The notes below the pieces were generated by a model. That model was not told the DNA's origin and made no database searches. It was given only the letters and a program-made list of their open reading frames with translations. From positions 1 through 64,000 of the forward strand of contig MCFE01000056.1 in assembly GCA_002104905.1 (NCBI GenBank): a stretch of DNA of 64,000 nt, in the 5' to 3' direction. The stretch comes from Basidiobolus meristosporus CBS 931.73. Taxonomy: Eukaryota > Fungi > Basidiobolomycota. A program made the position numbers and the translations under genes. Shown here piece after piece: positions 7,152 to 57,867 of this stretch (position 1 is its first letter; each line of letters begins with the position of its first letter).

Positions 7152-7180
7152 TTATTCTTTCAGAGTAAGGAGTCACTCGA

Positions 7181-23041: not shown

Positions 23042-26000
23042 TTAAGCCCAGTCACAGATGATGGAGCCCTCGAAACTCTTGCATACAGTGCCAACTGCAC
23101 AGGTGTTTCTAAGTAGCTCGCCGTTCGCACAAACCGTGAAGAGTCTGGATTTACCAGAGTCAACACATTCGTAGGTGCCATTGATGCAGCTGGCTTCAGT
23201 GGGCTTGGGGGAGTGAGAGTGGGGAGTTACCGTCACTGTGGTAGTAATGGTGATAGTGTTGGGATTAGGGATGCAGGAGGGTGGTGCGATGGAGGTGGTA
23301 GGATGAGAGGTGGCGCTACCAGACTTGGATTCGTCAGTAGTGTGGGCAGTGATATGAGAATCCTTGTGAGCTTCAGTGGTTGCAGAGGCCTTGTGGGTTT
23401 CTTTGGGTACAGTTGCTTCGGAAGTCTCAGTGACCTTGTGAGACTCGGATGATTTGGTACCCGTTTGAACCACGGTAGACTTGGGGGACTCGTGAGTCTC
23501 AGAAGCCTTAGGAACGCTGATAGTCTCATGTTCCTCGTGAGATTTGACAGTCTCGGTAGTCTCAGTTGGCCTATGGGTCTCATGACTCTCGGTGGTTTCC
23601 ATCGATCTGTGGGCAACGGTGGTCTCAGTGGATTTGTTGGATTCCGAGACTGCCTTGGCCTTGCTGGAAACAGAAGTCTCAAAGGATCTGTGAGAGTCGG
23701 GAGTCTCGGTTGACTTATGGGCGGTGTGGTGTTCAGTATCCTTGTGAGACTCGGCAGTCTCAGTTGGCTTGTGAATGTTACCAGTCTCAACGGTCTTGGA
23801 GGTTTGGTGGGATTCAGAAGTCACGGTAGGTTGGTGAGATTCCACAGTGTCCATTGGTCTATGGGTGTTGCTGGTCTCTGAGGTCATGTGGGATTGGGTA
23901 GTCTCAGTGGCCTTGTGCGATGAAGTGATCGCATTTGACTTGTGACCGCTGCTGATCTCAGAGGCTTTGTGAGCCTCGGATGTAGGGACTGATCTGCGGG
24001 ACTCCAAAGTATCAGTTGATTTATGGGCATCACTAGTCTCCGAGGTCATATGAGACTCAGTGGCCTTGTGAGATCCAGAAACCACTGTTGGCTTATGAGA
24101 TTCTACGTTTGCGGTGGATTTGTGTGCTTTCGTAGAGTCGGTTGACTGGTGAACAGTCTTGGGCTCAGTATCCTTGTGAGATTCGGTTGCCTCTGTTGGT
24201 TTGACATGGCTGCTGCTCTCCAGGCTCTTGGAGGATTCAGCAGTCATGTTGGGCTTGTGAGACTCTGGTGCAACAGTTTGTTGATGGGGCTTGATGGTCT
24301 CAGTTGGCTCGAGAGTGTCGCTGGCCTTGACGGTGGTGGCCTTGGGAGATTCGGTGGAATGGTGCTTTCCTGTGGTCTGAGCAGTATGTTGTGATTCAGT
24401 TGCTTTAGTGGAGCCATGGGGTTTCGTAGTCACCACGGAGCTGGAGGAAGCGGAGCTATCAGTAGCTTTGCGAGACTCGGTTGCCTTGGATTTACCAGTA
24501 GAGCTATGAGAGCTAGATGTTCCGGAAACCAAGTGGGATTCGGTTGGTTTTGGTGTCTCATGGGGTGTGGTGTCACTGGGAGTGTTGTGAGCAGTAGAAC
24601 GTTCATCTGATTTGGAATGCTCATCTGAGGCTGATTGACTGGGAGTAGACTTGGATTCAATGATCTCAGACGTGCTAGCCGTAGACTTCAAAGCCTCACT
24701 AGAGCTATGCGAAATGGGTGTTTCAATAGCCTTGTGGGACTCGGTTGATTTGAGGGTCTTGTGGGATGCGGAGTTGTGAGTGGTGCTATGAACACTCGAA
24801 AGTTCACTTGACTCGGAATGCACACTTGGAATATTGGATTTGGGGGTCTCGCTTCCGGAATGAGATTCAGTATGTTGATGAGTGTAGGACGTGGCGCTCC
24901 CATTGCTCGATGGGGTTGCCTGGCTCGAGTTAACCTTACTGGACATGGAAGTCTCAAGGTGCTTATGACTGTCTGAATGAGATTCAGTGTGATGCTGACT
25001 CGCCGACTCGATGCTCTTGGCAGATGAGTGAAGTGCGTAACTTGAAGTAGCCTTGCTGGACACAGAGGTCTCGACATGCTTCTGGCTCTTTGATTCACTG
25101 CTCTTAATCGGTGTAGAGCTTTCATGACCAGTCTTCGACTCGGACTTTGCTGTCGCAATTGTGCTAGACTCGGATTTCGAAGTGTCACTAGAACTATGCG
25201 ACACGGTTGACACGGCTGACACGGTAGCCTTATGGGTCTCTGTTGCCTTTGTGCTCTCATTGGTTGTGGAGTCGTGAGTGGGGCTGTGTGTAGTCAAGCT
25301 ACTAGTAGCGTGGCTTGAGGATGGCTTGCTGGATTTCTCGATGGTACTATGTGACACGGATGTGATGGTTGCCTTGTGAGACTCAGTAGATTTGGTTGTC
25401 TCGTGGGATGCGGAGCTGTTCGCGACGCTGCGAGCACTCGAATGATCAGTTGATTCTGAATGAGCACTTGATGCAGTGGACTTGGGTGCTTCAGTACTAG
25501 AATGGCTTTCTGTTGGCTTGACTACCTTCTTGTGCTCGTTGTACCACTTACAGATCTCGGCTTGCTGTCCTTCTGCCTCCATCATGGCAAAGAATCCACA
25601 GTCGTTGCTTACAATACACTCCAAGTTGTCTTTGAGGAACTGACCATGGCCAGGATTGCTATCATCACAGAGACATGAGAACGAGTCAACAAAGTTGGGG
25701 CTGTGAATGTCCTGAGTGTACTTGGACCAGCACTTCTTGCCCGCCTTGAGCGAGCAGTCAGTAATGCACTTATTGGGAGGTGGGAAGGGGAAGTAGTTGG
25801 ATGGTCTGGGAATCCAGGTAGGCTGAGCATCAGTGGTTGTTGGGGCTTCTGAAGTCTCGGAGCTCACTGAGGAGTCACGCGCTGCAGAGGTGGTTGTGGT
25901 GCTGTGAGATACGGCGGCCTTGCTCTCTGAGTGAGACTCGGTGTGATGCTGACTCGCCGACTCGGTGCTCTTGGCAGATGAATGAGGTGCGTAACTTGAA

Positions 26001-27550
26001 GTAGCCTTGCTGGACACGGAGGTCTCAACATGCTTCTGGCTCTTCGATTCACTGCTCTTAATCGGTGTAGAGCTTTCATGACCAGTCTTCGACTCGGACT
26101 TTGCAGTCGCAACTGTGCTAGACTCGGATTTCGAAGTCTCACTAGAACTATGCGACACGGTTGGCACGGTTGACACGGTAGCCTTATGGGTCTCTGTTGC
26201 CTTTGTGTTCTCATTGGTTGTGGAGGAGTGAGTGGGGCTGTGAGTAGTCAAGCTACTAGTAGCGTGGCTTGCGGATGGCTTGCTGGATTCAGAAGTCTCA
26301 ACATGCTTCTGGCTCTCTGAATCACCACTCTTAACTGGTGCGGAGATTACTTGGCTAGACGCAGACTTGGACTTGAGGGTTTCAGTGGTGCTTGGTTCGG
26401 ACTTCGATTTCTCGGTGGTAGTATGTGACACGGATGCGTTGGTGGCCTTGTGAGACTCAGTGGATTTGGTTGTCTCGTGAGACGCGGAGCTGTTCGCGAC
26501 ACTGCGAGCACTCGAATGATCAGTTGATTCTGAATGAGCACTTGATGCAGTGGACTTGTGTGCTTCAGTACTAGAATGGCTTTCTGTTGGCTTGACTACC
26601 TTCTTGTGCTCGTTGTACCACTTGCAGATCTCGGCTTGCTGTCCTTCTGCCTCCATCATGGCAAAGAACCCACAGTCGTTGCTTACAATACACTCCAAAT
26701 TGTCTTTGAGGAACTGACCATGGCCAGGATTGCTATCATCACAGAGACATGAGAACGAGTCAACAAAGTTGGGGCTGTGGATGTCCTGAGTGTACTTGGA
26801 CCAGCACTTCTTGCCCGCCTTGAGCGAGCAGTCAGTAATGCACTTATTGGGAGGTGGGAAGGGGAAGTAGTTGGATGGTCTGGGAATCCAGGTAGGCTGA
26901 GCATCAGTGGTTGTTGGGGCCTCTGAAGTCTCATTGCCCCCCGAGGAGTGATGGGATGTCGGAGTGGTAGCACTTCTGTGGGGATCAGAGGTCTCACCCA
27001 CTGAGCGAGATTCCGAGTGATGAGGACTCTTTGGCTGGGAACTCTCAATGGATGAGAGGGTTGCATGACTGGAGGTAACATTGCTCGGCTCGGAGGCCAC
27101 TGAACTACTGTGTGTCGATGAATCGATCGATTTGGTACTAGCTGTAGGTTGAGAGATTCGACTTGTAGTGCTTCGTACAGACTTAATAGTTGAGGACAAC
27201 GTATGTGGTTTTACCGTGGGCCTGTGCTCTTGGTACCAATCACATACAGTGCTGTTATTGCTTTGGTAGTCGGACCAATCAATCCAATGCCAAAAGCAAT
27301 TGTTGGAATAACAGTTTGACACTTCATTGGTGTACTCGGTAGTTTTGTAGCTACTGCCGCATTGGCAGGACAAGGATTCGATAAAGTGCGGATTGCTTGG
27401 ATCAAGCGTGTAATCAGGCAGACACTTCTGACCGGCTTGCATAAAACACTGTTCAAGACAACTACCGAAGTTCATGTTGGGAGGGTTGGCGGATGCTGAA
27501 ACGACAGCAGCCATTGTAAGGCCAGTGACGGCCTTGGTAGTAATATGCAT
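23042..27550 (-). CDS. Array gene 1 (1502 aa): signal + three 8-Cys CFEM-like domains + S/T/H stalk + C-terminal CBM19-like module
   Basis: Single ORF; one N-terminal Cys domain, two internal repeat domains 1074 bp apart; ends CINGTYEC...FTVCANG...C..GTVCK....IICDWA. Confidence 0.88.
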   Translation of the reverse strand: MHITTKAVTGLTMAAVVSASANPPNMNFGSCLEQCFMQAGQKCLPDYTLDPSNPHFIESLSCQCGSSYKTTEYTNEVSNCYSNNCFWHWIDWSDYQSNNSTVCDWYQEHRPTVKPHTLSSTIKSVRSTTSRISQPTASTKSIDSSTHSSSVASEPSNVTSSHATLSSIESSQPKSPHHSESRSVGETSDPHRSATTPTSHHSSGGNETSEAPTTTDAQPTWIPRPSNYFPFPPPNKCITDCSLKAGKKCWSKYTQDIHSPNFVDSFSCLCDDSNPGHGQFLKDNLECIVSNDCGFFAMMEAEGQQAEICKWYNEHKKVVKPTESHSSTEAHKSTASSAHSESTDHSSARSVANSSASHETTKSTESHKATNASVSHTTTEKSKSEPSTTETLKSKSASSQVISAPVKSGDSESQKHVETSESSKPSASHATSSLTTHSPTHSSTTNENTKATETHKATVSTVPTVSHSSSETSKSESSTVATAKSESKTGHESSTPIKSSESKSQKHVETSVSSKATSSYAPHSSAKSTESASQHHTESHSESKAAVSHSTTTTSAARDSSVSSETSEAPTTTDAQPTWIPRPSNYFPFPPPNKCITDCSLKAGKKCWSKYTQDIHSPNFVDSFSCLCDDSNPGHGQFLKDNLECIVSNDCGFFAMMEAEGQQAEICKWYNEHKKVVKPTESHSSTEAPKSTASSAHSESTDHSSARSVANSSASHETTKSTESHKATITSVSHSTIEKSSKPSSSHATSSLTTHSPTHDSTTNESTKATETHKATVSAVSTVSHSSSDTSKSESSTIATAKSESKTGHESSTPIKSSESKSQKHVETSVSSKATSSYALHSSAKSIESASQHHTESHSDSHKHLETSMSSKVNSSQATPSSNGSATSYTHQHTESHSGSETPKSNIPSVHSESSELSSVHSTTHNSASHKTLKSTESHKAIETPISHSSSEALKSTASTSEIIESKSTPSQSASDEHSKSDERSTAHNTPSDTTPHETPKPTESHLVSGTSSSHSSTGKSKATESRKATDSSASSSSVVTTKPHGSTKATESQHTAQTTGKHHSTESPKATTVKASDTLEPTETIKPHQQTVAPESHKPNMTAESSKSLESSSHVKPTEATESHKDTEPKTVHQSTDSTKAHKSTANVESHKPTVVSGSHKATESHMTSETSDAHKSTDTLESRRSVPTSEAHKASEISSGHKSNAITSSHKATETTQSHMTSETSNTHRPMDTVESHQPTVTSESHQTSKTVETGNIHKPTETAESHKDTEHHTAHKSTETPDSHRSFETSVSSKAKAVSESNKSTETTVAHRSMETTESHETHRPTETTETVKSHEEHETISVPKASETHESPKSTVVQTGTKSSESHKVTETSEATVPKETHKASATTEAHKDSHITAHTTDESKSGSATSHPTTSIAPPSCIPNPNTITITTTVTVTPHSHSPKPTEASCINGTYECVDSGKSRLFTVCANGELLRNTCAVGTVCKSFEGSIICDWA

Positions 27551-28682: not shown

Positions 28683-31600
28683 TTAAGCCCAGTCGCAAAT
28701 GATGGAGCCTTGGAAGTTCATGCATACAGTACCAGCTGCGCAGGTATTTCTAATTTGCTTACCGTTCGCACAAACTGTGAAGACTGGGGAATATCCAGAA
28801 TCAACACATTCGTATGTGCCATTGATGCAACTGGCTTCAGTGGGCTTGGGGGATTGAGAATGGGAGGCGAGTGTCTCCACTGGAGTTACCGTCACTGTAG
28901 TGGTGATGGTGACAGTGTTGGGATTAGGGATGCAGGAGGGTGGTGCGATGGAGGTGGTAGGATGAGAGGTGGCGCTACCAGACTTGGATTCGTCAGTAGT
29001 GTGGGCAGTGATATGAGAATCCTTGTGAGCTTCAGTGGTTGCAGAGGCCTTGTGGGTTTCTTTGGGTACAGTTGCTTCGGAAGTCTCAGTGACCTTGTGA
29101 GACTCGGATGATTTGGTACCCGTTTGAACCACGGTAGACTTGGGGGACTCGTGAGTCTCAGTAGCCTTAGGAACGCTGATAGTCTCATGTTCCTCGTGAG
29201 ATTTGACAGTCTCGGTAGTCTCAGTTGGCCTATGGGTCTCATGACTCTCGGTGGTTTCCATCGATCTGTGGGCAACGGCGGTCTCAGTGGATTTGTTGGA
29301 TTCCGAGACTGCCTTGGCCTTGCTGGAAACAGAAGTCTCAAAGGATCTGTGAGAGTCGGGAGTCTCGGTTGACTTGTGGGCGGTGTGGTGTTCAGTATCC
29401 TTGTGAGACTCGGCAGTCTCAGTTGGCTTGTGAATGTTACCAGTCTCAACAGTCTTGGAGGTTTGGTGGGATTCAGAAGTCACGGTAGGTTGGTGAGTTT
29501 CCACAGTGTCCACTGGTCTATGGGTGTTGCTGGTCTCTGAGGTCATGTGGGATTGGGTAGTCTCAGTGGCCTTGTGCGATGAAGTGATCGCATTTGACTT
29601 GTGAGCGCTGCTGATCTCAGAGGCTTTGTGAGCCTCGGATGTAGGGACTGATCTGCGGGACTCCAAAGTATCAGTTGATTTATGGGCATCACTAGTCTCC
29701 GAGGTCATATGAGACTCAGTGGCCTTGTGAGATCCAGAAACCACTGTTGGCTTATGAGATTCTACGTTTGCGGTGGATTTGTGTGCTTTCGTAGAGTCGG
29801 TTGACTGGTGAACAGTCTTGGGCTCAGTATCCTTGTGAGACTCGGTTGCCTCTGTTGGTTTGACATGGCTGCTGCTCTCCAGGCTCTTGGAGGATTTAGC
29901 AGTCATGTTGGGCTTGTGAGACTCTGGTGCAACAGTTTGTTGATGGGACTTGATGGTCTCAGTTGGCTCGAGAGTGTCGCTGGCCTTGACGGTGGTGGCC
30001 TTGGGAGATTCGGTGGAATGGTGCTTTCCTGTGGTCTGAGCAGTATGTTGTGATTCAGTTGCTTTAGTGGAGCCATGGGGTTTCGTAGTCACCACGGAGC
30101 TGGAGGAGGCGGAGCTATCAGTAGGTTTATGGGCCTCAGTTGATTCTGATTTAATAGATGTTCGGGAAACCAAATGGGTTTCGGTTGATTTGGCTGTCTC
30201 ATGGGATGTGGAGACATGTGCGATGCTGTGAACAGTCGAGTGTTCAGCTGACTTGGAATGCTCGCCTGAGATGGATTGACTAGCAGTAGACTTAGATTCA
30301 ATGGTCTCAGTTGTGCTAACCGCAGGCCTCAAAGCCTCACTAGAGCTATGTGAAATGGGTGTTTCAATAGCCTTGTGGGACTCGGTTGATTTGAGAGACT
30401 CATGAGATGCGGAGTGTGTGGTGGCACTATGAATAGATGAACGTCCAGTGGGCACTGAATGCACATTTGGAACACTGGACTTGCGGTTCTCGTTTTCGGA
30501 ATGAGATTCAGTATGTTGCTGAGTATTAAACTTGGTGCTCTCGTTGCTTGATGTGGTTGCCTGACTCGAGATAACCTTACTGGTCATGGAGGTCACAACA
30601 TGCTTATGACTCTTTGATGCACTACTCTTCATGGTTCTGATGGTGGTTTGACTAGCAACAGACCTGGACTCTGTGGCCTTATGGGACTCGGTTACTTTGG
30701 TTGTCTCATGAGATGCAGAGTCGTGAGTGATATTGCCAACAGTCGAATGTTCAGTCGACTTTGGATGCACGCTTGAGGCACTAGACTTGGGATTTTCAGT
30801 ACTAGAATGGCTTTCGGTTGGCTTGACTACCTTCTTGTGCTCGTTGTACCACTTACAGATCTCGGCTTCCTGTCCTTCTGCCTCCATCATGGCAAAGAAT
30901 CCACAGTCGTTGCTAATAATACACTCCAAATTGTCTTTGAGGAACTGGTCATGGCCAGGATTGCTATCATCACAGAGACATGAGAACGAGTCAACAAAGT
31001 TGGGGCTGTGGATGTCCTGAGTGTACTTGGACCAGCACTTCTTGCCCGCCTTGAGTGAGCAGTCAGTAATGCACTTGTTGGGAGATGGGAAGGGGAAGTA
31101 GTTGGATGGTCTGGGAATCCAGGTAGGCTGAGCATCAGTGGTTGTTGGGGCTTCTGAAGTCTCAGAGCTCATTGAGGAGTCACGCGCTGCAGAGGTGGTT
31201 GTGGTGCTGTGAGATACGGCGGCCTTGCTCTCTGAGTGAGATTCGGTGTGATGCTGACTCGCCGACTCGGTGCTCTTGGCAGATGAATGAGGTGCGTAAC
31301 TTGAAGTAGCCTTGCTGGACACGGAGGTCTCAACATGTTTCTGGCTCTTCGATTCACTGCTCTTAATCGGTGTAGAGCTTTCATGACCAGTCTTCGACTC
31401 GGACTTTGCAGTCGCAACTGTGCTAGACTCGGATTTCGAAGTCTCACTAGAACTATGCGACACGGTTGGCACGGTTGACACGGTAGCCTTATGGGTCTCT
31501 GTTGCCTTTGTGTTCTCCTTGGTTGTGGAGTGGTGAGTGGAGCTGTGAGTAGTCAAGCTACTAGTAGCGTGGCTTGCGGATGGCTTGCTGGATTCAGAAG

Positions 31601-34600
31601 TCTCAACATGCTTCTGGCTCTCTGAATCACCACTCTTAACTGGTGTGGAGGTTACTTGGCTAGAGGCAGACTTGGACTTGAGGGTTTCAGTGGTGCTTGG
31701 TTCGGACTTCGATTTCTCGATGGTACTATGTGACACGGATGTGATGGTTGCCTTGTGAGACTCAGTGGATTTGGTTGTCTCGTGGGATACGGAGCTGTTC
31801 GCGACACTGCGAGCACTCGAATGATCAGTTGATTCTGAATGAGCACTTGATGCACTAGATTTGCGTGCTTCAGTACTAGAATGGCTTTCGGTTGGCTTGA
31901 CTACCTTCTTGTGCTCGTTGTACCACTTACAGATCTCGGCTTCCTGTCCTTCTGCCTCCATCATGGCAAAGAATCCACAGTCGTTGCTTACAATACACTC
32001 CAAATTGTCTTTGAGGAACTGGCCATGGCCAGGATTGCTATCATCACAGAGACATGAGAACGAGTCAACAAAGTTGGGGCTGTGAATGTCCTGAGTGTAC
32101 TTGGACCAGCACTTCTTGCCCGCCTTGAGCGAGCAGTCAGTAATGCACTTGTTGGGAGATGGGAAGGGGAAGTAGTTGGATGGTCTGGGAATCCAGGTAG
32201 GCTGAGCATCAGTGGTTGTTGGGGCTTCTGAAGTCTCGGAGCTCACTGAGGAGCCATGCGCTACAGAGGTGGTTGTGGTGCTGTGAGATACGGCGGCCTT
32301 GCTCTCTGAGTGAGATTCGGTGTGATGCTGACTCGCCGACTCGGTGCTCTTGGCAGATGAATGAGGTGCGTAACTTGAAGTAGCCTTGCTGGACACGGAA
32401 GTCTCAACATGTTTCTGGCTCTTTGATTCACTGCTCTTAATCGGTGTAGAGCTTTCATGACCAGTCTTCGACTCGGACTTTGCAGTCGCAACTGTGCTAG
32501 ACTCGGATTTCGAAGTCTCACTAGAACTACGAGACACGGTTGACACGGCTGACACGGCTGACACGGTAGCCTTATGGGTCTCTGTTGCCTTTGTGTTCTC
32601 CTTGGTTGTGGAGTGGTGAGTGGAGCTGTGAGTAGTCAAGCTACTAGTAGCGTGGCTTGCGGATGGCTTGCTGGATTCAGAAGACTCAACATGCTTCTGG
32701 CTCTCTGAATCACCACTCTTAACTGGTGCGGAGGTTACTTGGCTAGACGCAGACTTGGACTTGAGGGTCTCAGTGGTGCTTGGTTCGGACTTCGATTTCT
32801 CGATGGTACCATGTGACACGGATGTGTTGGTGGCCTTGTGAGACTCAGTGGATTTGGTTGTCTCGTGGGATACGGAGCTGTTCGCGACGCTGCGAGCACT
32901 CGAATGATCAGTTGATTCTGAATGAGCACTTGATGCAGTGGACTTGTGTGCTTCAGTACTAGAATGGCTTTCGGTTGGCTTGACTACCTTCTTGTGCTCG
33001 TTGTACCACTTACAGATCTCGGCTTCCTGTCCTTCTGCCTCCATCATGGCAAAGAATCCACAGTCGTTGCTTACAATACACTCCAAATTGTCTTTGAGGA
33101 ACTGACCATGGCCAGGATTGCTATCATCACAGAGACATGAGAACGAGTCAACAAAGTTGGGGCTGTGGATGTCCTGAGTGTACTTGGACCAGCACTTCTT
33201 GCCCGCCTTGAGTGAGCAGTCAGTAATGCACTTGTTGGGAGATGGGAAGGGGAAGTAGTTGGATGGTCTGGGAATCCAGGTAGGCTGAGCATCAGTGGTT
33301 GTTGGGGCTTCTGAAGTCTCGGAGCTCACTGAGGAGCCATGCGTTGCAGAGGTGGTTGTGGTGCTGTGAGATACGGCGGCCTTGCTCTCTGAGCGAGATT
33401 CGGTGTGATGCTGACTCGCCGACTCAGTGCTCTCGGTAGATGAATGAGGTGTATAACTTGAAGTAGCCTTGCTGGACACGGAGGTCTCAACATGCTTCTG
33501 GCTCTTCGATTCACTGCTCTTAATCGGTGTAGAGCTTTCATGACCAGTCTTCGACTCGGACTTTGCAGTCGCAACTGTGCTAGACTCGGATTTGGAAGTC
33601 TTACTAGAGCTATGCGACACGGTTGACACGGTAGCCTTATGGGTCTCTGTTGCCTTTGTGTTCTCATTGGTTGTGGAGTGGTGAGTGGAGCTGTGAGTAG
33701 TCAAGCTACTAGTAGCGTGGCTTGCGGATGGCTTGCTGGATTCAGAAGTCTCAACATGCTTCTGGCTCTCTGAATCACCACTCTTAACTGGTGCGGAGGT
33801 TACTTGGCTAGACGCAGACTTGGACTTGAGGGTCTCAGTGGTGCTTGGTTCGGACTTCGATTTCTCGATGGTACTATGTGACACAGATGTGTTGGTAGCC
33901 TTGTGAGACTCAGTGGATTTGGTTGTCTCGTGGGATGCGGAGCTGTTCGCGACGCTGCGGGCACTCGAATGATCAGTTGATTCTGAATGAGCACTTGATG
34001 CAGTGGACTTGTGTGCTTCAGTACTAGAATGGCTTTCGGTTGGCTTGACTACCTTCTTGTGCTCGTTGTACCACTTACAGATCTCGGCTTCCTGTCCTTC
34101 TGCCTCCATCATGGCAAAGAACCCACAGTCGTTGCTTACAATACACTCCAAATTGTCTTTGAGGAACTGACCATGGCCAGGATTGCTATCATCACAGAGA
34201 CATGAGAACGAGTCAACAAAGTTGGGGCTGTGGATGTCCTGAGTGTACTTGGACCAGCACTTCTTGCCCGCCTTGAGCGAGCAGTCAGTAATGCACTTGT
34301 TGGGAGATGGGAAGGGGAAGTAGTTGGATGGTCTGGGAATCCAGGTAGGCTGAGCATCAGTGGTTGTTGGGGCTTCTGAAGTCTCGGAGCTCACTGAGGA
34401 GCCATGCGCTGCAGAGGTGGTTGTGGTGCTGTGAGATACGGCGGCCTTGCTCTCTGAGTGAGATTCGGTGTGATGCTGACTCGCCGACTCGGTGCTCTTG
34501 GCAGATGAATGAGGTGCGTAACTTGAAGTAGCCTTGCTGGACACGGAGGTCTCAACATGCTTCTGGCTCTTTGATTCACTGCTCTTAATCGGTGTAGAGC

Positions 34601-36404
34601 TTTCATGACCAGTCTTCGACTCGGACTTTGCAGTCGCAATTGTGCCAGACTCGGATTTCGAAGTCTCACTAGAACTATGAGACACGGTTGGCACGGTTGA
34701 CACGGTAGCCTTATGGGTCTCTGTTGCCTTTGTGCTCGCATTGGTTGTGGAGTCGTGAGTGGGGCTGTGAGTAGTCAAGCTACTAGTAGCGTGGCTTGCG
34801 GATGGCTTGCTGGATTCAGAAGACTCAACATGCTTCTGGCTCTCTGAATCACCACTCTTAACTGGTGTGGAGGTTACTTGGCTAGAGGCAGACTTGGACT
34901 TGAGGGTTTCAGTGGTGCTTGGTTCGGACTTCGATTTCTCGGTGGTGCTATGTGACACGGATGTGATGGTTGCCTTGTGAGACTCAGTGGATTTGGTTGT
35001 CTCGTGGGATACGGAGCTGTTCGCGACGCTGCGGGCACTCGAATGATCAGTTGATTCTGAATGAGCACTTGATGCAGTGGACTTGTGTGCTTCAGTACTA
35101 GAATGGCTTTCTGTTGGCTTGACTACCTTCTTGTGCTCGTTGTACCACTTACAGATCTCGGCTTGCTGTCCTTCTGCCTTCATCATGGCAAAGAATCCAC
35201 AGTCGTTGCTAATAATACACTCCAAGTTGTCTTTGAGGAACTGGCCATGGCCAGGATTGCTATCATCACAGAGACATGAGAACGAGTCAACAAAGTTGGG
35301 GCTGTGGATGTCCTGAGTGTACTTCGACCAGCACTTCTTGCCCGCCTTGAGCGAGCAGTCAGTTATGCACTTGTTGGGAGATGGGAAGGGGAAGTAGTTG
35401 GATGGTCTGGGAATCCAGGTAGGCTGAGCATCAGTGGTTGTTGGGGCTTCTGAAGTCTGGGAGCTCACTGAGGAGCCATGCGCTGCAGAGGTGGTTGTGG
35501 TGCTGTGAGATACGGGGGCCTTGCTCTCTGAGCGAGATTCGGTGTGATGCTCACTCGCCGACTCGATGCTCTTGGTAGATGAATGAGGTGCGTAACTCAT
35601 GGTGACCTTGCTGGACACGGAACTCTCAACATGCTTCTGGCTCTTTGAGTCGCTGCTCTTAATAGGCTTAGAAGACATTTGGCTACCCATAGACTTGGGT
35701 TTTAAAGTCTTACTAGAGCTATCTGATATAGTAATGTGGTGAGTTTGTGTTGATTTGGTTGTCTCGTTAGCTGTGGAGTCATGTGCATCACTGTGTTTAG
35801 TTGGGTTTTCAGTTGCAGGAATCGAAGTAGTCGTACTGATAGATTCGGCTTTTGAAGCTTCTATAGAACTTTGTGCTCTTTGTGATGAAGTACCATCTTC
35901 GGACTTCACACTTTTAACCGTACTAGTAGAGTCGATTGATGGCTCGGAGGCTGCTGAACTACTATGTATCGATGAATCGATCGATTTGGTACTAGCTGTA
36001 GGCTGAGAGATCCGACTTGTAGTGCTTCGTACAGACTTAATAGTTGAGGACAACGTATGTGGTTTTACCGTGGGCTTGTGCTCTTGGTACCAATCACATA
36101 CAGTGCTGTTATTGCTTTGGTAGTCAGACCAATCAATCCAATGCCAATAGCAATTGTTGGAATAACAGTTTGACACTTCATTGGTGTACTCGGTAGTTTT
36201 GTAGCTACTGCCGCATTGGCAGGACAAGGATTCGATAAAGTGCGGATTGCTTGGATCAAGCGTGTAATCAGGCAGACACTTCTGACCGGCTTGCATAAAA
36301 CACTGTTCAAGACAACTGCCGAAGTTCATGTTGGGAGGGTTGGCGGATGCTGAAACGACAGCAGCCATTGTAAGGCCAGTGACGGCCTTGGTAGTAATAT
36401 GCAT
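28683..36404 (-). CDS. Array gene 2 (~2573 aa from ATG 36404): signal + six 8-Cys CFEM-like domains + stalk + CBM19-like module
   Basis: Starts MHITTKA like gene 1; five internal TWIPRPSNYFPF-Cys-domain units; ends IICDWA. Confidence 0.88.
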   Translation of the reverse strand: MHITTKAVTGLTMAAVVSASANPPNMNFGSCLEQCFMQAGQKCLPDYTLDPSNPHFIESLSCQCGSSYKTTEYTNEVSNCYSNNCYWHWIDWSDYQSNNSTVCDWYQEHKPTVKPHTLSSTIKSVRSTTSRISQPTASTKSIDSSIHSSSAASEPSIDSTSTVKSVKSEDGTSSQRAQSSIEASKAESISTTTSIPATENPTKHSDAHDSTANETTKSTQTHHITISDSSSKTLKPKSMGSQMSSKPIKSSDSKSQKHVESSVSSKVTMSYAPHSSTKSIESASEHHTESRSESKAPVSHSTTTTSAAHGSSVSSQTSEAPTTTDAQPTWIPRPSNYFPFPSPNKCITDCSLKAGKKCWSKYTQDIHSPNFVDSFSCLCDDSNPGHGQFLKDNLECIISNDCGFFAMMKAEGQQAEICKWYNEHKKVVKPTESHSSTEAHKSTASSAHSESTDHSSARSVANSSVSHETTKSTESHKATITSVSHSTTEKSKSEPSTTETLKSKSASSQVTSTPVKSGDSESQKHVESSESSKPSASHATSSLTTHSPTHDSTTNASTKATETHKATVSTVPTVSHSSSETSKSESGTIATAKSESKTGHESSTPIKSSESKSQKHVETSVSSKATSSYAPHSSAKSTESASQHHTESHSESKAAVSHSTTTTSAAHGSSVSSETSEAPTTTDAQPTWIPRPSNYFPFPSPNKCITDCSLKAGKKCWSKYTQDIHSPNFVDSFSCLCDDSNPGHGQFLKDNLECIVSNDCGFFAMMEAEGQEAEICKWYNEHKKVVKPTESHSSTEAHKSTASSAHSESTDHSSARSVANSSASHETTKSTESHKATNTSVSHSTIEKSKSEPSTTETLKSKSASSQVTSAPVKSGDSESQKHVETSESSKPSASHATSSLTTHSSTHHSTTNENTKATETHKATVSTVSHSSSKTSKSESSTVATAKSESKTGHESSTPIKSSESKSQKHVETSVSSKATSSYTPHSSTESTESASQHHTESRSESKAAVSHSTTTTSATHGSSVSSETSEAPTTTDAQPTWIPRPSNYFPFPSPNKCITDCSLKAGKKCWSKYTQDIHSPNFVDSFSCLCDDSNPGHGQFLKDNLECIVSNDCGFFAMMEAEGQEAEICKWYNEHKKVVKPTESHSSTEAHKSTASSAHSESTDHSSARSVANSSVSHETTKSTESHKATNTSVSHGTIEKSKSEPSTTETLKSKSASSQVTSAPVKSGDSESQKHVESSESSKPSASHATSSLTTHSSTHHSTTKENTKATETHKATVSAVSAVSTVSRSSSETSKSESSTVATAKSESKTGHESSTPIKSSESKSQKHVETSVSSKATSSYAPHSSAKSTESASQHHTESHSESKAAVSHSTTTTSVAHGSSVSSETSEAPTTTDAQPTWIPRPSNYFPFPSPNKCITDCSLKAGKKCWSKYTQDIHSPNFVDSFSCLCDDSNPGHGQFLKDNLECIVSNDCGFFAMMEAEGQEAEICKWYNEHKKVVKPTESHSSTEARKSSASSAHSESTDHSSARSVANSSVSHETTKSTESHKATITSVSHSTIEKSKSEPSTTETLKSKSASSQVTSTPVKSGDSESQKHVETSESSKPSASHATSSLTTHSSTHHSTTKENTKATETHKATVSTVPTVSHSSSETSKSESSTVATAKSESKTGHESSTPIKSSESKSQKHVETSVSSKATSSYAPHSSAKSTESASQHHTESHSESKAAVSHSTTTTSAARDSSMSSETSEAPTTTDAQPTWIPRPSNYFPFPSPNKCITDCSLKAGKKCWSKYTQDIHSPNFVDSFSCLCDDSNPGHDQFLKDNLECIISNDCGFFAMMEAEGQEAEICKWYNEHKKVVKPTESHSSTENPKSSASSVHPKSTEHSTVGNITHDSASHETTKVTESHKATESRSVASQTTIRTMKSSASKSHKHVVTSMTSKVISSQATTSSNESTKFNTQQHTESHSENENRKSSVPNVHSVPTGRSSIHSATTHSASHESLKSTESHKAIETPISHSSSEALRPAVSTTETIESKSTASQSISGEHSKSAEHSTVHSIAHVSTSHETAKSTETHLVSRTSIKSESTEAHKPTDSSASSSSVVTTKPHGSTKATESQHTAQTTGKHHSTESPKATTVKASDTLEPTETIKSHQQTVAPESHKPNMTAKSSKSLESSSHVKPTEATESHKDTEPKTVHQSTDSTKAHKSTANVESHKPTVVSGSHKATESHMTSETSDAHKSTDTLESRRSVPTSEAHKASEISSAHKSNAITSSHKATETTQSHMTSETSNTHRPVDTVETHQPTVTSESHQTSKTVETGNIHKPTETAESHKDTEHHTAHKSTETPDSHRSFETSVSSKAKAVSESNKSTETAVAHRSMETTESHETHRPTETTETVKSHEEHETISVPKATETHESPKSTVVQTGTKSSESHKVTETSEATVPKETHKASATTEAHKDSHITAHTTDESKSGSATSHPTTSIAPPSCIPNPNTVTITTTVTVTPVETLASHSQSPKPTEASCINGTYECVDSGYSPVFTVCANGKQIRNTCAAGTVCMNFQGSIICDWA
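30730..35640 (-). repeat. Intragenic tandem array of ~1.07 kb units (five Cys-domain copies); ends approximate
   Basis: Marker gggaatccaggtagg at 31113, 32187, 33270, 34335 and 35409 (spacings 1074, 1083, 1065, 1074). Confidence 0.9.
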
Positions 36405-50036: not shown

Positions 50037-50382
50037 TGTTGTAAAAGTCCTGGAGATATTGGAAGTGATTTGGAAGGACAAGTAGATTATGTGGTTCTCA
50101 CTTAATGATTTATTGAATGTAAAAGTAGTATTTATACTTTTACATAGTCTTGGCATTTCTAACACAAAGAATAGGTTAAGAAAGGTCCCAAAACATGTGT
50201 GCAAAGTTTGGGGCTGTTTGGACAACTTTGAGAATTTTTCTTGTTCTGGGTACCTGGTATTTTGGTGATAATATTCCAAGTCCCAACAAGGAATTTGGTC
50301 AGTATTTGCCAGGATTTGAAGGTAATGATCTAAGTGACTAAATTAGGTGAATATTTAGGTGGAATTGTGAATTTTTACAGCA
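50037..50382 (-). repeat. Copia-family LTR, followed by an inverted partial LTR (~50385-50507) and further fragments to ~50760
   Basis: TGTTGTAAAAGTCC...TTACAGCA; matches 43725-44074. Confidence 0.8.
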
Positions 50383-51820
50383 TTTGTTGTGCCAAGACCA
50401 TGCAAAAGTATAAATAATACTTTGACACTAAATAAATCATTAAGTGAATACCACATAATCTACTTGTCCTCCCAATCACTTCCTATGTCTCCAAGACTCT
50501 TACAACAAAAACCACATAATCTCCCTGCTGACCTAATCTCTTCTGATTTGCACAAAACTTTTGCAATGCCCAGAGCTTGAGAACTTTCAGACTGGTCTAA
50601 AAGCTTCTAAGCTTTGCACACATGCTCTTATGACCTGATATTTTGATAATATATTCCAAGTCCCAACAAAGAATTTAGACACAATATTACAAGATTCATA
50701 TGCTATGATCCAAGTTTAGCAAGTTAATGTAGTGTTTAGGTGCAATTACAAATATATAACAAAATACAGGTGCAAAGCTTGGTGGTTGTAAAGACATTGC
50801 AGATTCAGGGCTTTGAGAGCCACCGGATTGGTTGACCGGATACAACTTTCAGGCTAACTTCTAACAAGTCTCTGCTTACGCATGAATATTAGTAATTGTT
50901 AGTAGCTATTTCTGGACAAGAGTACAGCCAATACGCAATGTAACCAAGCACGGTATTGAAATTGCGGAGCAAATGTACGTATTGGTGATTGTTAGGACCA
51001 TTTTCCCGCCACATTCTTATGCAGAGGGTCGATGAGCACAGGTGTATTTCGGCTGACGATAAGCCACGATGTCTCACAGAACCTTTTAAAGGTTGAAAGG
51101 TTAATGACTAACATTAAACGGTAAAGAAAACTCTATTCAACACTGGCTATAGGCCAAGGTGTAGCTCACTTCAAATGGGGATAGTTATTGTTGGCTCCAG
51201 AAATGGCCATTTCCGGTCTAGAGTTCAACATCCCGTGGAGATAAAGTACGAGAAGATTGGAAATAGAGTGGAAATGAACGAAGGTATTTTAGTACCACCA
51301 TAACCTCAATGCCCATTATAGACCAAAAACCCTCAAATCAGGACCAAGTCGAACTAACAAAAGCATATTCAGCCATTTTCTTACTGCAAAGAAGATTGGG
51401 ACATGGACCAAAATAGTCGCCATGGCAATCAACCCGCAATCGAAACACCTCCATCCGATTTCACAGACCCAAATCGGAACACACGAAGGAAACAATGTGT
51501 TGCAATTTTCGATTAAAATAGACAGTCGGATACCCAAAATACCAAATCGGAACCTAGTTCCAGATATGCCTAATTGATCAGCAGGACAAATCTGGCCAGA
51601 TAAGGGCCAGAAATTTCCCATCTTCCCGGATGATGTTTTTCGAATTCCAAACAAAACCCAACGTAAACACTAGTCCGTAACTGGAACGAGGAGAACGTTC
51701 GATGTAGTACCATGTAATCTTATTATTTATTCATTACCGATAATTTAATATTCACTCTATGTCGAAGGGTGGGATGGTACCATATCCCCCTACGAACAGT
51801 CAAATGCCTAGAAAGATAGC

Positions 51821-53008
51821 TTAGGCCCAGTCACAGATGATGGAACCTTCGAAGGTCTTGCAAACAGTGCCAGGGGCGCAGACTTGCTCAATGGCCTTAC
51901 CGTTAGCGCAAACAGTGAACTTGGCGGATTTACCAGATTCAACGCATTGGTAGGTACCATTGGAGCAAGAGGCTTCAGTGGGCTTGGCAGAGTGGCCAAC
52001 AGTTACGGTCTTGGTGACAGTGAGGGTAACTGGTGCGCAAGTTTCAGCAGGCTTGTGAGCCTCAGTAGTCTTGTGGGCTTCAGTAGTGTGGTGGGTCTCG
52101 GTAGGCTTGTGAGTCTCGGTGGTCTTCTCGGTCTCGGTAGACTTGTGAGTCTCGGTGGACTTCTCGGTCTCGGTAGACTTGTGAGTCTCGGTGGACTTCT
52201 CGGTCTCAGTGGACTTGTGGGTCTCGGTGGACTTCTCGGTCTCAGTGGACTTGTGGGTCTCGGTGGACTTCTCGGTCTCAGTGGACTTGGGAGTCTCGGT
52301 GGACTTCTCGGTCTCAGTAGACTTGTGGGTCTCGGTGGACTTCTCGGTCTCAGTAGACTTGTGGGTCTCGGTGGACTTCTCAGTCTCAGTAGACTTGTGG
52401 GTCTCGGTGGACTTCTCGGTCTCAGTAGACTTGTGGGTCTCGGTGGACTTCTCGGTCTCAGTAGACTTGTGGGTCTCGGTAGACTTCTCGGTCTCAGTAG
52501 ACTTGGGAGTCTCGGTGGACTTCTCGGTCTCAGTAGACTTGTGGGTCTCGGTGGACTTCTCGGTCTCAGTAGACTTGTGGGTCTCGGTGGACTTCTCGGT
52601 CTCAGTAGACTTGTGGGTCTCGGTGGACTTCTCGGTCTCGGTGGACTTGTGGGTCTCGGTGGACTTCTCGGTCTCAGTGGGTTTGACGCTGTTTTCTTTA
52701 TACCAGGCGCAAATCTGACCTTGCAAAGTCATCAACTCGGTGACATGTGACAATGTGTAGGGACAGTTCATTGCGCACAAAGCAGTGTTATCGGTGAATT
52801 TGCTTTTCAAGGGACTTTCACAGATTAGTTCGATGGATTTCATAAAGTTAGGACTGCTTGGATCCTGGGTGTAATCCGGCATCAGTTTCTTGCCAGCGTT
52901 CAAGGCGCAGTCAGTAATACATTGAGTAGGGTATTTGAATGGGAAGTCGACAGCAGAGACAACAACTGAGGCGGCAAGAACCGCAAGGGTCTTAGAGGCA
53001 AAATGCAT
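51821..53008 (-). CDS. Array gene 4 (395 aa): signal + 6-Cys domain + ~32 TETxKS hexamers + CBM19-like module
   Basis: Single ORF ending IICDWA. Confidence 0.9.
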   Translation of the reverse strand: MHFASKTLAVLAASVVVSAVDFPFKYPTQCITDCALNAGKKLMPDYTQDPSSPNFMKSIELICESPLKSKFTDNTALCAMNCPYTLSHVTELMTLQGQICAWYKENSVKPTETEKSTETHKSTETEKSTETHKSTETEKSTETHKSTETEKSTETHKSTETEKSTETPKSTETEKSTETHKSTETEKSTETHKSTETEKSTETHKSTETEKSTETHKSTETEKSTETHKSTETEKSTETPKSTETEKSTETHKSTETEKSTETHKSTETEKSTETHKSTETEKSTETHKSTETEKTTETHKPTETHHTTEAHKTTEAHKPAETCAPVTLTVTKTVTVGHSAKPTEASCSNGTYQCVESGKSAKFTVCANGKAIEQVCAPGTVCKTFEGSIICDWA

Positions 53009-55073: not shown

Positions 55074-55679
55074 TTAAGCCCAGTCGCATATGATGGAATT
55101 TCTAACCGTCTTGCAGACAGTGCCAGCTGAACAGGCTTGGGTCACGAGTTTGCCATTGTTACAGATAGTGAATTGACCAGATTTTCCTGAATCGACGCAT
55201 TGGTAAGCACCATTAATACAAGAAGCTTTAGCTGGTTTAGAAGTTTGCGTTTTGGTCACAGGAATGGCTACACTCGTTTTAGTTACAGTTGGAGTTTGGA
55301 CGGGAGTAAACATGGTGGTGAAGGCACTGTTCATTGCGTTTTGGGGCTCATCAAGATTCTCAAGCGTATTGAAAAGGTTACAAAAGGTTTCAGTCAATAC
55401 CGGTAACTCAGGCATGGTAGTATTACACCTCTCAGCCAGACAATACTTGCCTTGTTTTAGATAAACGTTTACTAGAGGAGAATCTTCGACACAAAGTAAT
55501 TCGAGTGATTCCTGGACGGAAGAATTTGATTGAACCTGCTCATATTGGTACCAGATTCTTAGACCGGCTTCCATCACACAATTCAAAACACAGTCGAGCC
55601 GTTGTTGGGTTTGAGGCTCGGAGGCAGAGACTAGGACAGAAGTGAAGAGTCCAGCAAGAATTGTGGTGGAGAAACGCAT
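55074..55679 (-). CDS. Array gene 5 (201 aa): signal + 6-Cys domain + short linker + CBM19-like module
   Basis: Single ORF ending IICDWA; paralogue of gene 6. Confidence 0.88.
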   Translation of the reverse strand: MRFSTTILAGLFTSVLVSASEPQTQQRLDCVLNCVMEAGLRIWYQYEQVQSNSSVQESLELLCVEDSPLVNVYLKQGKYCLAERCNTTMPELPVLTETFCNLFNTLENLDEPQNAMNSAFTTMFTPVQTPTVTKTSVAIPVTKTQTSKPAKASCINGAYQCVDSGKSGQFTICNNGKLVTQACSAGTVCKTVRNSIICDWA

Positions 55680-57261: not shown

Positions 57262-57867
57262 TTAAGCCCAGTCACAGAGGATGGAATCCTTAACAGTCTT
57301 GCAGACAGTACCAGGTGCACAGGCTTCGGTTACGAGTTTGCCATTATTACAAACAGTGAATTCGACAGATTTTCCGGAGTCGACGCATTGGTAGGTGCCG
57401 TCGACACAAGAGGCTTGGGTAGGTTTAGGAGCTTGCGTTTCGGCAACAGGAATGACTGTACTCGCCACAGTTACAATAGGGGTTTGGACGGGAGTAAACA
57501 TGGTGGTGAAGGCACTGTTCATTGCATTTTGGGGCTCCTCAACATTCATGAGCTCGCTGAACAAGCCACAGACGGCTTCAGGTATGGCAGGCAACTCAGC
57601 CAAGGTAATATTGCAATTTCTAGCCAAACACACTGTGCTTTGTTTTACGAAAGTGGTTGATAGTGGAGAGTCTGGTGCACAAAACATTTCAATAGATTCT
57701 AGGATGGAAGGATTGGCTTGACCTTGATCATACTGGAACCAGGTCCTTAAACCAGCCTCCATCGCACAACCAGCTAAGCATTCGAATCGTTGTTCGATTT
57801 GATATTCGGAGGCGGAGGCTAGGACGGTGGTAAAGAGTCCAGCAAGTACTGTGGTAGAAAAGCGCAT
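57262..57867 (-). CDS. Array gene 6 (201 aa): signal + 6-Cys domain + short linker + CBM19-like module
   Basis: Single ORF ending ILCDWA; shares the EPQNAMNSAFTTMFTPVQTP linker with gene 5. Confidence 0.88.
   Translation of the reverse strand: MRFSTTVLAGLFTTVLASASEYQIEQRFECLAGCAMEAGLRTWFQYDQGQANPSILESIEMFCAPDSPLSTTFVKQSTVCLARNCNITLAELPAIPEAVCGLFSELMNVEEPQNAMNSAFTTMFTPVQTPIVTVASTVIPVAETQAPKPTQASCVDGTYQCVDSGKSVEFTVCNNGKLVTEACAPGTVCKTVKDSILCDWA

What the first reader, a model, noticed from the sequence alone, without database searches (positions are those of the whole stretch)
23042..57867. Six-gene array of secreted 'Cys-domain / His-rich stalk / chitin-anchor' proteins with length graded from 201 to ~2573 aa
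Seen: six same-strand, intronless paralogues share a signal peptide, a C-x3-C..AG...Y..(D)...S..(C)xC..C..C..C domain and a near-invariant C-terminus ending (I/L)CDWA. They differ in stalk length (201, 201, 395, 507, 1502, ~2573 aa) and in Cys-domain number (1,1,1,1,3,6). Known: the C-terminus resembles the fungal CBM19 chitin-binding module, and CFEM hemophores (Rbt5/Pga7/Csa2) relay heme across the Candida wall. Inference: this may be a wall-tethered system presenting ligand-binding domains at different heights above the chitin layer, for heme/metal capture or as variable adhesins. It would use a chitin anchor instead of GPI; no hydrophobic GPI tail is present. I recognise no named family with this architecture.
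Basis: partly seen in the sequence, partly recalled or inferred. Interest (0 to 1): 0.85.

Follow-up and report, generated by a model that had tools for sequence, protein, structure and literature searches.

The report
Chitin-tethered CFEM-like wall protein array
A Basidiobolus fungus carries six neighbouring genes for exported proteins, each with a cysteine-rich CFEM-like head (one to six copies), a sugar-carrying stalk of very variable length and a chitin-binding tail where relatives have a lipid (GPI) anchor signal; the design is real and uncharacterised, but its job is untested.

Summary
There are six intact, intronless, minus-strand ORFs of 201, 201, 395, 507, 2573 and 1502 aa. They carry 1, 1, 1, 1, 6 and 3 Cys-rich heads, and every one ends in (I/L)CDWA.

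- **Organism:** Basidiobolus, syntenic with B. meristosporus CBS 931.73.
- **Tail:** a CBM19 module. Pfam scores it above the cut-off in the two short genes; the other four are clear homologues.
- **Head:** a confidently predicted small helical domain (pLDDT 91) with no clear solved counterpart.
- **Head family:** about 76 representative proteins, the 20 looked up being from Basidiobolus, Mortierellomycotina and Mucorales or unnamed metagenome sequences. About half end in a GPI-like hydrophobic tail. Only Basidiobolus members end in CBM19.
- **Link to CFEM:** probable but not proven. The window's heads score below Pfam's cut-off. One B. ranarum relative passes it, UniProt names two relatives CFEM, and Csa2 ranks 9-10 of 48,161 chains at a weak Z of 3.5.
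- **Stalks:** mainly Ser/Thr-rich. His is 8-10% in four genes and absent in two.
- **Function:** heme or metal capture and a height-graded function remain untested.

The scan already reported a like six-gene array on another piece of this genome (s1-194652). I call it a new variant of known kinds, of moderate interest.

The parts
57262..57867 (-). Gene g201a: signal peptide, one 6-Cys head, short Pro/Thr/Ala linker, CBM19 tail (201 aa)
   Evidence: (CBM_19 25.6 bits, cut-off 20.1)
55074..55679 (-). Gene g201b: same build as g201a (201 aa, 64% identical to it)
   Evidence: (CBM_19 22.2 bits)
51821..53008 (-). Gene g395: one 6-Cys head, stalk of KSTETE/KSTETH repeats, CBM19 tail (395 aa)
38380..39903 (-). 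Gene g507: one 8-Cys head, longer stalk of the same repeat type, CBM19 tail (507 aa)
28683..36404 (-). Gene g2573: six 8-Cys heads (one N-terminal type plus five near-identical copies in units of about 358 aa), a 672-aa terminal stalk, CBM19 tail (2573 aa from the ATG at 36404)
23042..27550 (-). Gene g1502: three 8-Cys heads, a 784-aa terminal stalk, CBM19 tail; tandem duplicate of g2573 (91-97% nt identity)
57532..57807 (-). Head of g201a (6 Cys; the family Asp is replaced by Gly)
55344..55619 (-). Head of g201b (6 Cys; the family Asp is replaced by Val)
52673..52948 (-). Head of g395 (6 Cys, Asp kept)
39583..39843 (-). Head of g507 (8 Cys)
36057..36335 (-). Head 1 of g2573 (N-terminal type, 8 Cys; Pfam CFEM 13.3 bits, E 0.087)
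30816..35396 (-). Span holding heads 2-6 of g2573 (35112-35396, 34038-34322, 32973-33257, 31890-32174, 30816-31100), each within a unit of about 1074 nt
   Evidence: modelled
27203..27481 (-). Head 1 of g1502 (N-terminal type; Pfam CFEM 11.9 bits, E 0.24)
25511..26869 (-). Span holding heads 2-3 of g1502 (26585-26869 and 25511-25795)
57265..57438 (-). CBM19 module of g201a (6 Cys)
55077..55250 (-). CBM19 module of g201b
51824..51994 (-). CBM19-type module of g395 (Pfam 14.9 bits, below the cut-off; homologous to the short genes' modules)
38383..38553 (-). CBM19-type module of g507 (Pfam 18.3 bits, just below the cut-off)
28686..28859 (-). CBM19-type module of g2573 (Pfam 11.9 bits when scanned alone)
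23045..23218 (-). CBM19-type module of g1502
52094..52678 (-). 36-nt tandem array (16.2 copies, 96% matches) encoding the g395 stalk
38611..39574 (-). 18/36/108-nt tandem arrays encoding the g507 stalk

Best explanation
The array is a lineage-specific, tandemly expanded subfamily of secreted, mucin-like glycoproteins of Basidiobolus.

**Build of each protein.** It enters the secretory pathway through an N-terminal signal peptide. It then carries three parts:
1. one to six small, disulfide-stabilised helical heads of a zygomycete-wide family that is probably a remote branch of the CFEM superfamily;
2. a Ser/Thr/Glu/Lys/His repeat stalk that is probably O-glycosylated and extended;
3. a C-terminal CBM19 chitin-binding module.

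**Proposed mechanism.** Most relatives of the head have a GPI-anchor signal at the C-terminal position. I infer that the CBM19 module took over the tethering role. It would hold the C-terminus non-covalently on chitin, either in the fungus's own wall or in chitin it meets. The stalk would then project the heads outward.

**Origin of the length differences.** They arise from unequal recombination in the 36-nt and roughly 1074-nt repeats.

**Shown:** the architecture, the homologies, the anchor swap across relatives and the repeat-driven length change.

**Inferred:** secretion, glycosylation, chitin tethering and the outward orientation. What the heads bind is unknown.
For: **Genes and parts**
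- ORFs and domain counts.
- CBM_19 scores above Pfam's cut-off in two genes. All six tails align with 23 invariant columns, including six Cys.

**The head**
- AlphaFold2 model with pLDDT 88.8 and 91.3, four to five helices.
- A profile of the head finds 76 representatives among 1.84 billion proteins.
- The named ones come from Basidiobolus, Linnemannia, Mortierella, Actinomortierella, Lobosporangium, Lunasporangiospora, Zychaea, Sporodiniella and Backusella.

**Anchor swap**
- 38 of 80 family proteins end in a GPI-like hydrophobic tail. Seven end in CBM19, all from Basidiobolus.
- P0020 of B. meristosporus has the same head clade and the same stalk type but a GPI-like tail.
- In B. ranarum, a CBM19-ended and a GPI-like-ended paralogue lie side by side.

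**CFEM link**
- P0009:149-245 scores 23.0 bits against a cut-off of 22.
- UniRef gives CFEM names to P0008, the apparent orthologue of the giant genes, and to P0018.
- Csa2 (4y7s_A) ranks 9 and 10 of 48,161 chains, with 67-72 residues aligned.

**Repeat dynamics**
- 36-nt units at 96% identity.
- g1502 and g2573 are tandem duplicates.
- The syntenic CBS 931.73 contig has 519 aa in place of 507, five heads in place of six, and 1440 aa in place of 1502.
Against: **Tail**
- There is no experimental evidence for expression, secretion, glycosylation or chitin binding.
- Four of the six tails fall below Pfam's CBM_19 cut-off when scanned on their own.

**Head**
- The window's own heads fail Pfam's CFEM cut-off, at best 13.3 bits.
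- A family profile finds no PDB sequence at E up to 10.
- Foldseek finds nothing.
- The Csa2 match, at Z 3.5-3.6, is tied with unrelated helical proteins.
- Most family members have four or six Cys, not eight.

**Repeats**
- Length differences between assemblies could be partly assembly error in repeats. The public contig has a frame break in the larger gene.
Confidence: 0.6

Rival explanations
1. The heads are hemophore-like CFEM domains, or metal binders helped by the His in the stalks. They are held at graded heights above the chitin layer and pass heme or metal inward, as Csa2, Rbt5 and Pga7 do in Candida.
For: - CFEM-like features are present.
- A near-invariant Asp (86 of 93 heads) is kept in 11 of the 13 window heads. 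In Candida CFEM hemophores a conserved Asp is the axial iron ligand (review PMC13586796).
- Stalk His is 8-10% with a regular T-E-T-H-K period.
- The heads would sit at very different distances from the tail, 49 to 2420 residues.
Against: - It is not established that the family Asp is equivalent to Csa2 Asp80.
- The two 201-aa genes lack both the Asp and any His.
- Most CFEM proteins of other fungi are not heme binders (my reading of the reviews; itself covers only the Candida heme binders).
- No iron- or heme-related gene lies in the window.
- A paralogue (P0003) has a stalk with no His.
- The length gradation has a simple neutral origin in repeat slippage.
Confidence: 0.15
2. The proteins are released. 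They act on chitin outside the fungus's own wall, or as a coat over it. They could be a peritrophin- or mucin-like layer, an adhesive for spores on arthropod cuticle or gut contents, or a shield of wall chitin against host chitinases. The heads would serve as spacers or as binding surfaces for a partner.
For: - The build of a mucin stalk plus a small six-Cys chitin-binding module matches insect peritrophins. Pfam also gives weak CBM_14 hits to the tails.
- Earlier notes of this scan, unchecked here, report many other secreted CBM19-bearing proteins in this genome. That suggests a general chitin-directed secretome.
- From general knowledge, Basidiobolus lives in amphibian and reptile guts and passes through insects.
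Against: - Relatives with the same head are GPI-signal proteins, that is, tethered to the producer's own surface. That points to a cell-surface role for the head.
- Nothing in the sequence tells own-wall chitin from foreign chitin.
Confidence: 0.2
3. The head is not a CFEM relative. It is an independent zygomycete-specific helical Cys domain whose eight-Cys form in Basidiobolus mimics the CFEM spacing by convergence.
For: - Only 12 of 93 heads have eight Cys. The core is C1, C2, C6 and C7, with C3/C4 and C5/C8 present or absent as pairs.
- The three identified heads with CFEM hits at E <= 1 (a fourth hit was not identified) are all eight-Cys heads, so Cys spacing may drive the score.
- No PDB sequence hit.
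- The best structural Z of any chain is 4.6.
- PSI-BLAST surveys found no CFEM in zygomycetes (PMC4530338).
Against: - One relative passes Pfam's curated CFEM cut-off over profile positions 9-66 of 66.
- UniProt's automatic rule calls two relatives CFEM.
- Csa2 is in the top 10 of 48,161 chains in both models and covers nearly the whole head.
- The whole-protein design of relatives (signal peptide, head, Ser/Thr spacer, GPI signal) is the typical CFEM wall-protein design.
Confidence: 0.3

Closest known systems
Candida albicans CFEM wall and secreted proteins (Rbt5, Pga7, Csa2; Pfam PF05730)
   Same: - Fungal, secreted, with a small helical head stabilised by up to eight Cys in collinear order.
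- A conserved Asp.
- A Ser/Thr-rich spacer.
- Relatives of the head carry GPI-like signals.
- Multi-head and tandem-gene expansion also occurs in CFEM families.
   Different: - The window's heads fail Pfam's CFEM cut-off.
- The loop between Cys3 and Cys4 is much longer.
- Three heads have six Cys.
- The tether is a CBM19 module, not GPI.
- Heme binding is untested.
- The host is a zygomycete-grade fungus, where CFEM was reported absent (PMC4530338).
CBM19 modules of fungal chitinases (for example the C-terminal chitin-binding domain of S. cerevisiae Cts1; Pfam PF03427)
   Same: A C-terminal six-Cys module of about 55-60 residues follows a Ser/Thr-rich linker. Pfam scores it above the cut-off in two of the genes.
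   Different: There is no catalytic GH18 domain. The module is joined to CFEM-like heads and to very long stalks.
Insect peritrophins and intestinal mucins (CBM14 plus mucin domains)
   Same: Secreted proteins that combine small six-Cys chitin-binding modules with heavily O-glycosylated Ser/Thr stalks. The tails give weak CBM_14 hits.
   Different: They come from a different kingdom and a different CBM family. Here there is a single terminal module instead of several, and there are added helical heads.
Repeat-stalk fungal adhesins (Als of Candida, Flo of Saccharomyces)
   Same: A ligand-binding head sits on a Ser/Thr repeat stalk whose copy number changes quickly by recombination. The genes lie in tandem or in gene families.
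   Different: Those proteins are GPI-linked to glucan and have heads of unrelated folds.

Membership tests
CBM19 (Pfam PF03427) | Score at or above Pfam's gathering cut-off (20.1 bits) | tested here: met
   g201a scores 25.6 bits and g201b 22.2 bits. g507 (18.3), g395 (14.9) and g2573 (11.9) fall below it, and g1502 gives no hit. All six tails nevertheless align with 23 invariant columns, so the four are members by homology to the two.
CBM19 (Pfam PF03427) | Six conserved cysteines in a module of about 60 residues | tested here: met
   Six invariant Cys are present in all six tails and in four Basidiobolus relatives.
CBM19 (Pfam PF03427) | Binds chitin | not testable with these tools
   Needs a pull-down with recombinant modules.
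CFEM (Pfam PF05730) | Score at or above Pfam's gathering cut-off (22 bits) | tested here: not met
   The window's heads score at best 13.3 bits (E 0.087) and 11.9 bits, and the repeated head gives no hit. A B. ranarum relative, 56% identical to the repeated head, scores 23.0 bits. I therefore file the head as CFEM-like, not as a Pfam CFEM member.
CFEM (Pfam PF05730) | Eight cysteines in conserved order and spacing | tested here: inconclusive
   Ten of 13 window heads have eight Cys with spacing C-x3-C-x7-C-x18/19-C-x-C-x15/16-C-x4/5-C-x15/16-C; three have six. The order is collinear with the published CFEM pattern as I recall it, but the middle loop is longer. In the wider family only 12 of 93 heads have eight Cys.
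CFEM (Pfam PF05730) | Helical-basket fold as in Csa2 (PDB 4Y7S) | tested here: inconclusive
   The model has pLDDT 91. Csa2 ranks 9 and 10 of 48,161 chains, with Z 3.6 and 3.5, 67-72 residues aligned and rmsd 3.7-4.2 A. Foldseek finds nothing, and the top Z of any chain is 4.6.
CFEM (Pfam PF05730) | Conserved Asp that ligates heme iron in the hemophore members | tested here: inconclusive
   An Asp is present in 86 of 93 heads and in 11 of 13 window heads. Whether it corresponds to Csa2 Asp80 was not established.
GPI-anchored fungal wall proteins | C-terminal hydrophobic tail preceded by small residues | tested here: not met
   All six window proteins end in polar ...CDWA; hydropathy of the last 18 residues, measured on the family's CBM19-ended members, is 0.1-0.6. 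By contrast, 38 of 80 family proteins have such a tail.
Mucin-like (Pro/Thr/Ser) stalk proteins | Long low-complexity region with a high Ser+Thr share, built from tandem repeats | tested here: met
   S+T is 38-46% of the stalks of the four longer genes. They are built from 36-nt and roughly 1074-nt tandem units. Glycosylation itself cannot be tested here.

The most novel reading that the evidence does not exclude
The array is a chitin-tethered counterpart of the Candida CFEM relay. Heads held at set heights (about 50 to 2400 residues above a CBM19 foot) would capture heme or a metal and hand it inward, and the regularly spaced His/Glu of the stalks would act as a metal-binding rail. This would be an ancient, pre-Dikarya form of CFEM-based nutrient capture that uses chitin binding instead of GPI.
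Probability: 0.12. Interest if true: 0.85.

Novelty: new variant of a known kind. Interest (0 to 1): 0.55.

Why it matters
**Origin of CFEM.** If the head is a true CFEM relative, CFEM-type domains predate the Dikarya. That contradicts the published dating of their origin (PMC4530338). It also gives a six- or four-Cys 'minimal' form for studying how the fold evolved.

**Tethering.** The swap of a GPI signal for a chitin-binding module within one protein family is a natural experiment in how fungi tether surface proteins. Basidiobolus seems to use CBM19 very widely.

**Annotation.** The two giant genes are present only as partial models in the public B. meristosporus annotation, so this part of the surface proteome of an occasional human pathogen is effectively unannotated.

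None of this is functionally tested.

Tried and rejected
- **Sequence link to solved structures.** I searched PDB sequences with an 8-sequence profile, a 93-sequence profile and the single CFEM-hitting relative. None gave a CFEM hit.
- **Foldseek.** A search against PDB gave nothing below E 3.
- **Profile-profile comparison with CFEM.** This could not be run. No tool gave me bona fide CFEM sequences, and I did not type any from memory.
- **Word-indexed searches.** A search with the 93-head alignment at E <= 10 returned only three family members. A search with the tail region of g507 returned nothing. Both are limits of the index, not evidence of absence.
- **Pfam 'Plasmodium_HRP' and 'Baculo_8kDa' hits.** I rejected them as low-complexity or sub-threshold noise.
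- **Anchor-type tree.** A tree of the 93 heads was too short (96 columns) to resolve the order of anchor changes. It shows only that CBM19-ended proteins fall in two Basidiobolus groups.
- **Genomic context.** I looked for iron- or heme-related neighbours and found none. The window holds an aquaporin, transposon ORFs and glycine dehydrogenase.
Full report
**1. The observation**

The six ORFs exist as described (translations). All are on the minus strand:

| Gene | Coordinates | Length (aa) | Heads |
|---|---|---|---|
| g201a | 57262-57867 | 201 | 1 |
| g201b | 55074-55679 | 201 | 1 |
| g395 | 51821-53008 | 395 | 1 |
| g507 | 38380-39903 | 507 | 1 |
| g2573 | 28683-36404 | 2573 | 6 |
| g1502 | 23042-27550 | 1502 | 3 |

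- Each runs without interruption from a Met followed by a hydrophobic signal-peptide-like stretch to a stop after (I/L)CDWA.
- A pattern scan gives 1, 1, 1, 1, 6 and 3 heads. A six-frame HMM scan of the whole 64-kb window agrees, finds six C-terminal modules and finds nothing else of the kind.
- None of the six has a hydrophobic C-terminal tail (all end in polar ...CDWA; hydropathy measured on CBM19-ended relatives).
- One correction concerns the stalk. It is mainly Ser/Thr-rich (38-46% S+T) with Glu and Lys. His is 8-10% in the stalks of the four longer genes and zero in the two short ones.

**2. Organism and locus**

- The closest proteins are from Basidiobolus ranarum and B. meristosporus.
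- Contig MCFE01000542.1 of B. meristosporus CBS 931.73 is syntenic. It is 99.7% identical in the flank and 92-97% identical inside the array.
- In that assembly the g507 counterpart is 519 aa. The larger giant gene has five heads and is split by a frame break. The smaller giant gene is 1440 aa with three heads.
- The public annotation has only partial models of 188 and 204 aa for the giant genes.
- g1502 and g2573 are tandem duplicates of gene-sized extent, 91-97% identical in nucleotides. They differ in the number of units of about 1074 nt.
- The g395 stalk is a 36-nt array of 16 copies at 96% identity.
- Stalk length and head number are thus set by recent repeat recombination. Some of the difference between assemblies may be assembly error.
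- A Ty1/copia element and older fragments of it lie between g507 and g395.

**3. The tail**

- Pfam CBM_19 (PF03427) scores 25.6 and 22.2 bits in the two short genes, against a cut-off of 20.1. It scores 18.3 and 14.9 bits in g507 and g395, 11.9 bits for the isolated g2573 tail, and gives no hit for g1502.
- All six tails and four Basidiobolus relatives share 23 invariant columns, including six Cys, so they form one module family.
- Weak CBM_14 hits accompany the CBM_19 hits.
- UniRef already calls one B. meristosporus paralogue 'Carbohydrate-binding module family 19 protein'.
- Chitin binding itself is inferred from family membership.

**4. The head**

- No Pfam family covers it at the curated threshold.
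- AlphaFold2 predicts a compact domain of four to five helices with high confidence: pLDDT 88.8 from 8 sequences and 91.3 from 93.
- A profile search of 1.84 billion representatives finds 76 proteins, 37 of them below 1e-10.
- Those looked up come from Basidiobolus, Mortierellomycotina (Linnemannia, Mortierella, Actinomortierella, Lobosporangium, Lunasporangiospora) and Mucorales (Zychaea, Sporodiniella, Backusella), or are unnamed metagenome sequences. All the named ones are hypothetical proteins.
- Typical members are proteins of 110-250 aa built as signal peptide, one head, a short Ser/Thr spacer and a hydrophobic C-terminal tail preceded by small residues. That is a GPI-signal-like end. 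38 of 80 proteins have it, and most of the rest are truncated models.
- Seven proteins end in CBM19, and all are from Basidiobolus.
- P0020 of B. meristosporus falls in the same head group as the window's genes and has the same S-E-T/H-K type of stalk, but it ends in a GPI-like tail.
- In B. ranarum a CBM19-ended and a GPI-like-ended paralogue are adjacent on one contig.
- This comparative evidence supports the view that CBM19 replaced the GPI signal as the C-terminal tether.

**5. Is the head a CFEM domain?**

*For*
- Ten of 13 window heads have eight Cys in an order collinear with the CFEM pattern.
- P0009:149-245 of B. ranarum, 56% identical to the repeated window head, scores 23.0 bits against CFEM (cut-off 22) over profile positions 9-66 of 66.
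- UniRef names P0008, the apparent B. ranarum orthologue of the giant genes, and P0018 'Extracellular membrane protein CFEM domain-containing protein'.
- In an all-against-representatives structural search, the only CFEM structure (Csa2, 4y7s_A) ranks 9 and 10 of 48,161. It has 67-72 aligned residues spanning nearly the whole head.
- The whole-protein design of relatives is the classic CFEM wall-protein design.

*Against*
- The window's heads score only 11.9-13.3 bits.
- Z 3.5-3.6 is tied with unrelated helical proteins, and no chain exceeds Z 4.6.
- Foldseek and the PDB sequence searches are blank.
- Across the family the Cys count is four (33 heads), six (45) or eight (12). C3/C4 and C5/C8 are present or absent as pairs, and CFEM hits come only from the eight-Cys heads.

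*Verdict*
- I rate remote homology at about 65-70%. I file the head as CFEM-like, not as a Pfam CFEM member.
- If the homology is real, it conflicts with the report that CFEM is absent from zygomycetes and arose in the ancestor of the Dikarya (PMC4530338).

**6. How it most likely works**

- *Shown:* the architecture, the homologies, the anchor swap among relatives and the repeat-driven length change.
- *Inferred:*
  - The proteins are secreted and O-glycosylated.
  - The CBM19 foot holds them on chitin.
  - The stalk projects the heads.
- At the roughly 0.25 nm per residue often assumed for extended mucin-like chains, the heads would sit between about 12 nm (short genes) and several hundred nm (first head of g2573) from the foot. 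This is only an order-of-magnitude illustration.
- The heads' ligand is unknown. The near-invariant Asp (86 of 93 heads) is kept in 11 of 13 window heads and lost in both short genes.
- In Candida CFEM hemophores a conserved Asp ligates heme iron (PMC13586796), but positional equivalence was not shown here.
- No neighbouring gene points to iron or heme.

**7. Rivals**

- A released coat, adhesin or chitin shield acting on foreign or own chitin, like insect peritrophins: about 0.2.
- On the identity of the head alone, convergence instead of CFEM homology: about 0.3.

**8. Novelty**

- Each part belongs to, or resembles, a known family, and automatic names exist for relatives.
- I found no characterised family or paper on a CFEM-like head with a CBM19 tail. 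Searches for Basidiobolus with CFEM or CBM19, and for CFEM with a chitin-binding domain, gave nothing relevant.
- The scan already reported a like six-gene array on another piece of this same genome with the same reading (s1-194652). It also holds several notes of other CBM19-bearing secreted proteins in this genome. I treat these as leads; the tests above were done independently on this window.
- Verdict: a real, well-defined, uncharacterised new variant of known kinds, of moderate interest.

Noticed in passing
window 43725-48385: A Ty1/copia LTR retrotransposon with a 1172-aa gag-pol ORF (44446-47964). The 300-nt stretches at the start of its two LTRs are 100% identical, so the insertion looks recent. 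It is nested among older fragments of the same family (41456-43400 and 48384-50507, including ORFs 49068-49658 and 49689-50279). The same element, 98.8% identical, is present in the CBS 931.73 contig.
   Followed up: partly
window 12469-13953 (-): A 494-aa ORF with a piggyBac-type DDE_Tnp_1_7 transposase domain (E 3.5e-41).
   Followed up: no
L001:5739-12406 and L001:13523-17845 (B. meristosporus CBS 931.73, MCFE01000542.1): The public assembly holds the two giant genes, but its annotation has only partial models of 188 and 204 aa. The larger gene is split by a frame break near L001:9917 and has five heads, against six in the window.
   Followed up: partly
L002:3245-8586 (B. ranarum JASJQH010000717.1): A tandem array of head-family genes that, unlike the window's genes, contain introns (the head matches start at profile position 18). 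A two-head CBM19-ended gene lies next to a two-head gene with a GPI-like tail, then a one-head gene. A likely decayed copy lies at 7148-7328.
   Followed up: partly
alignment A4 (93 heads): Cysteines come and go in pairs across the family: C3 with C4, and C5 with C8. C1, C2, C6 and C7 are nearly always present. This implies the disulfide pairing. Mortierellomycotina heads are mostly of the four-Cys form.
   Followed up: partly
window 60119-63166 (-) and 3163-3996 (+): Ordinary flanking genes, both apparently intronless: glycine cleavage P-protein (1015 aa) and an aquaporin (MIP, 277 aa).
   Followed up: no
P0056 cluster (metagenome and Logan assemblies): One 143-aa head-family protein with a hydrophobic tail stands for 64 sequences, one of which was seen on over 100 contigs of public assemblies. 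It comes from an unnamed organism, so the family is also common in environmental data.
   Followed up: no
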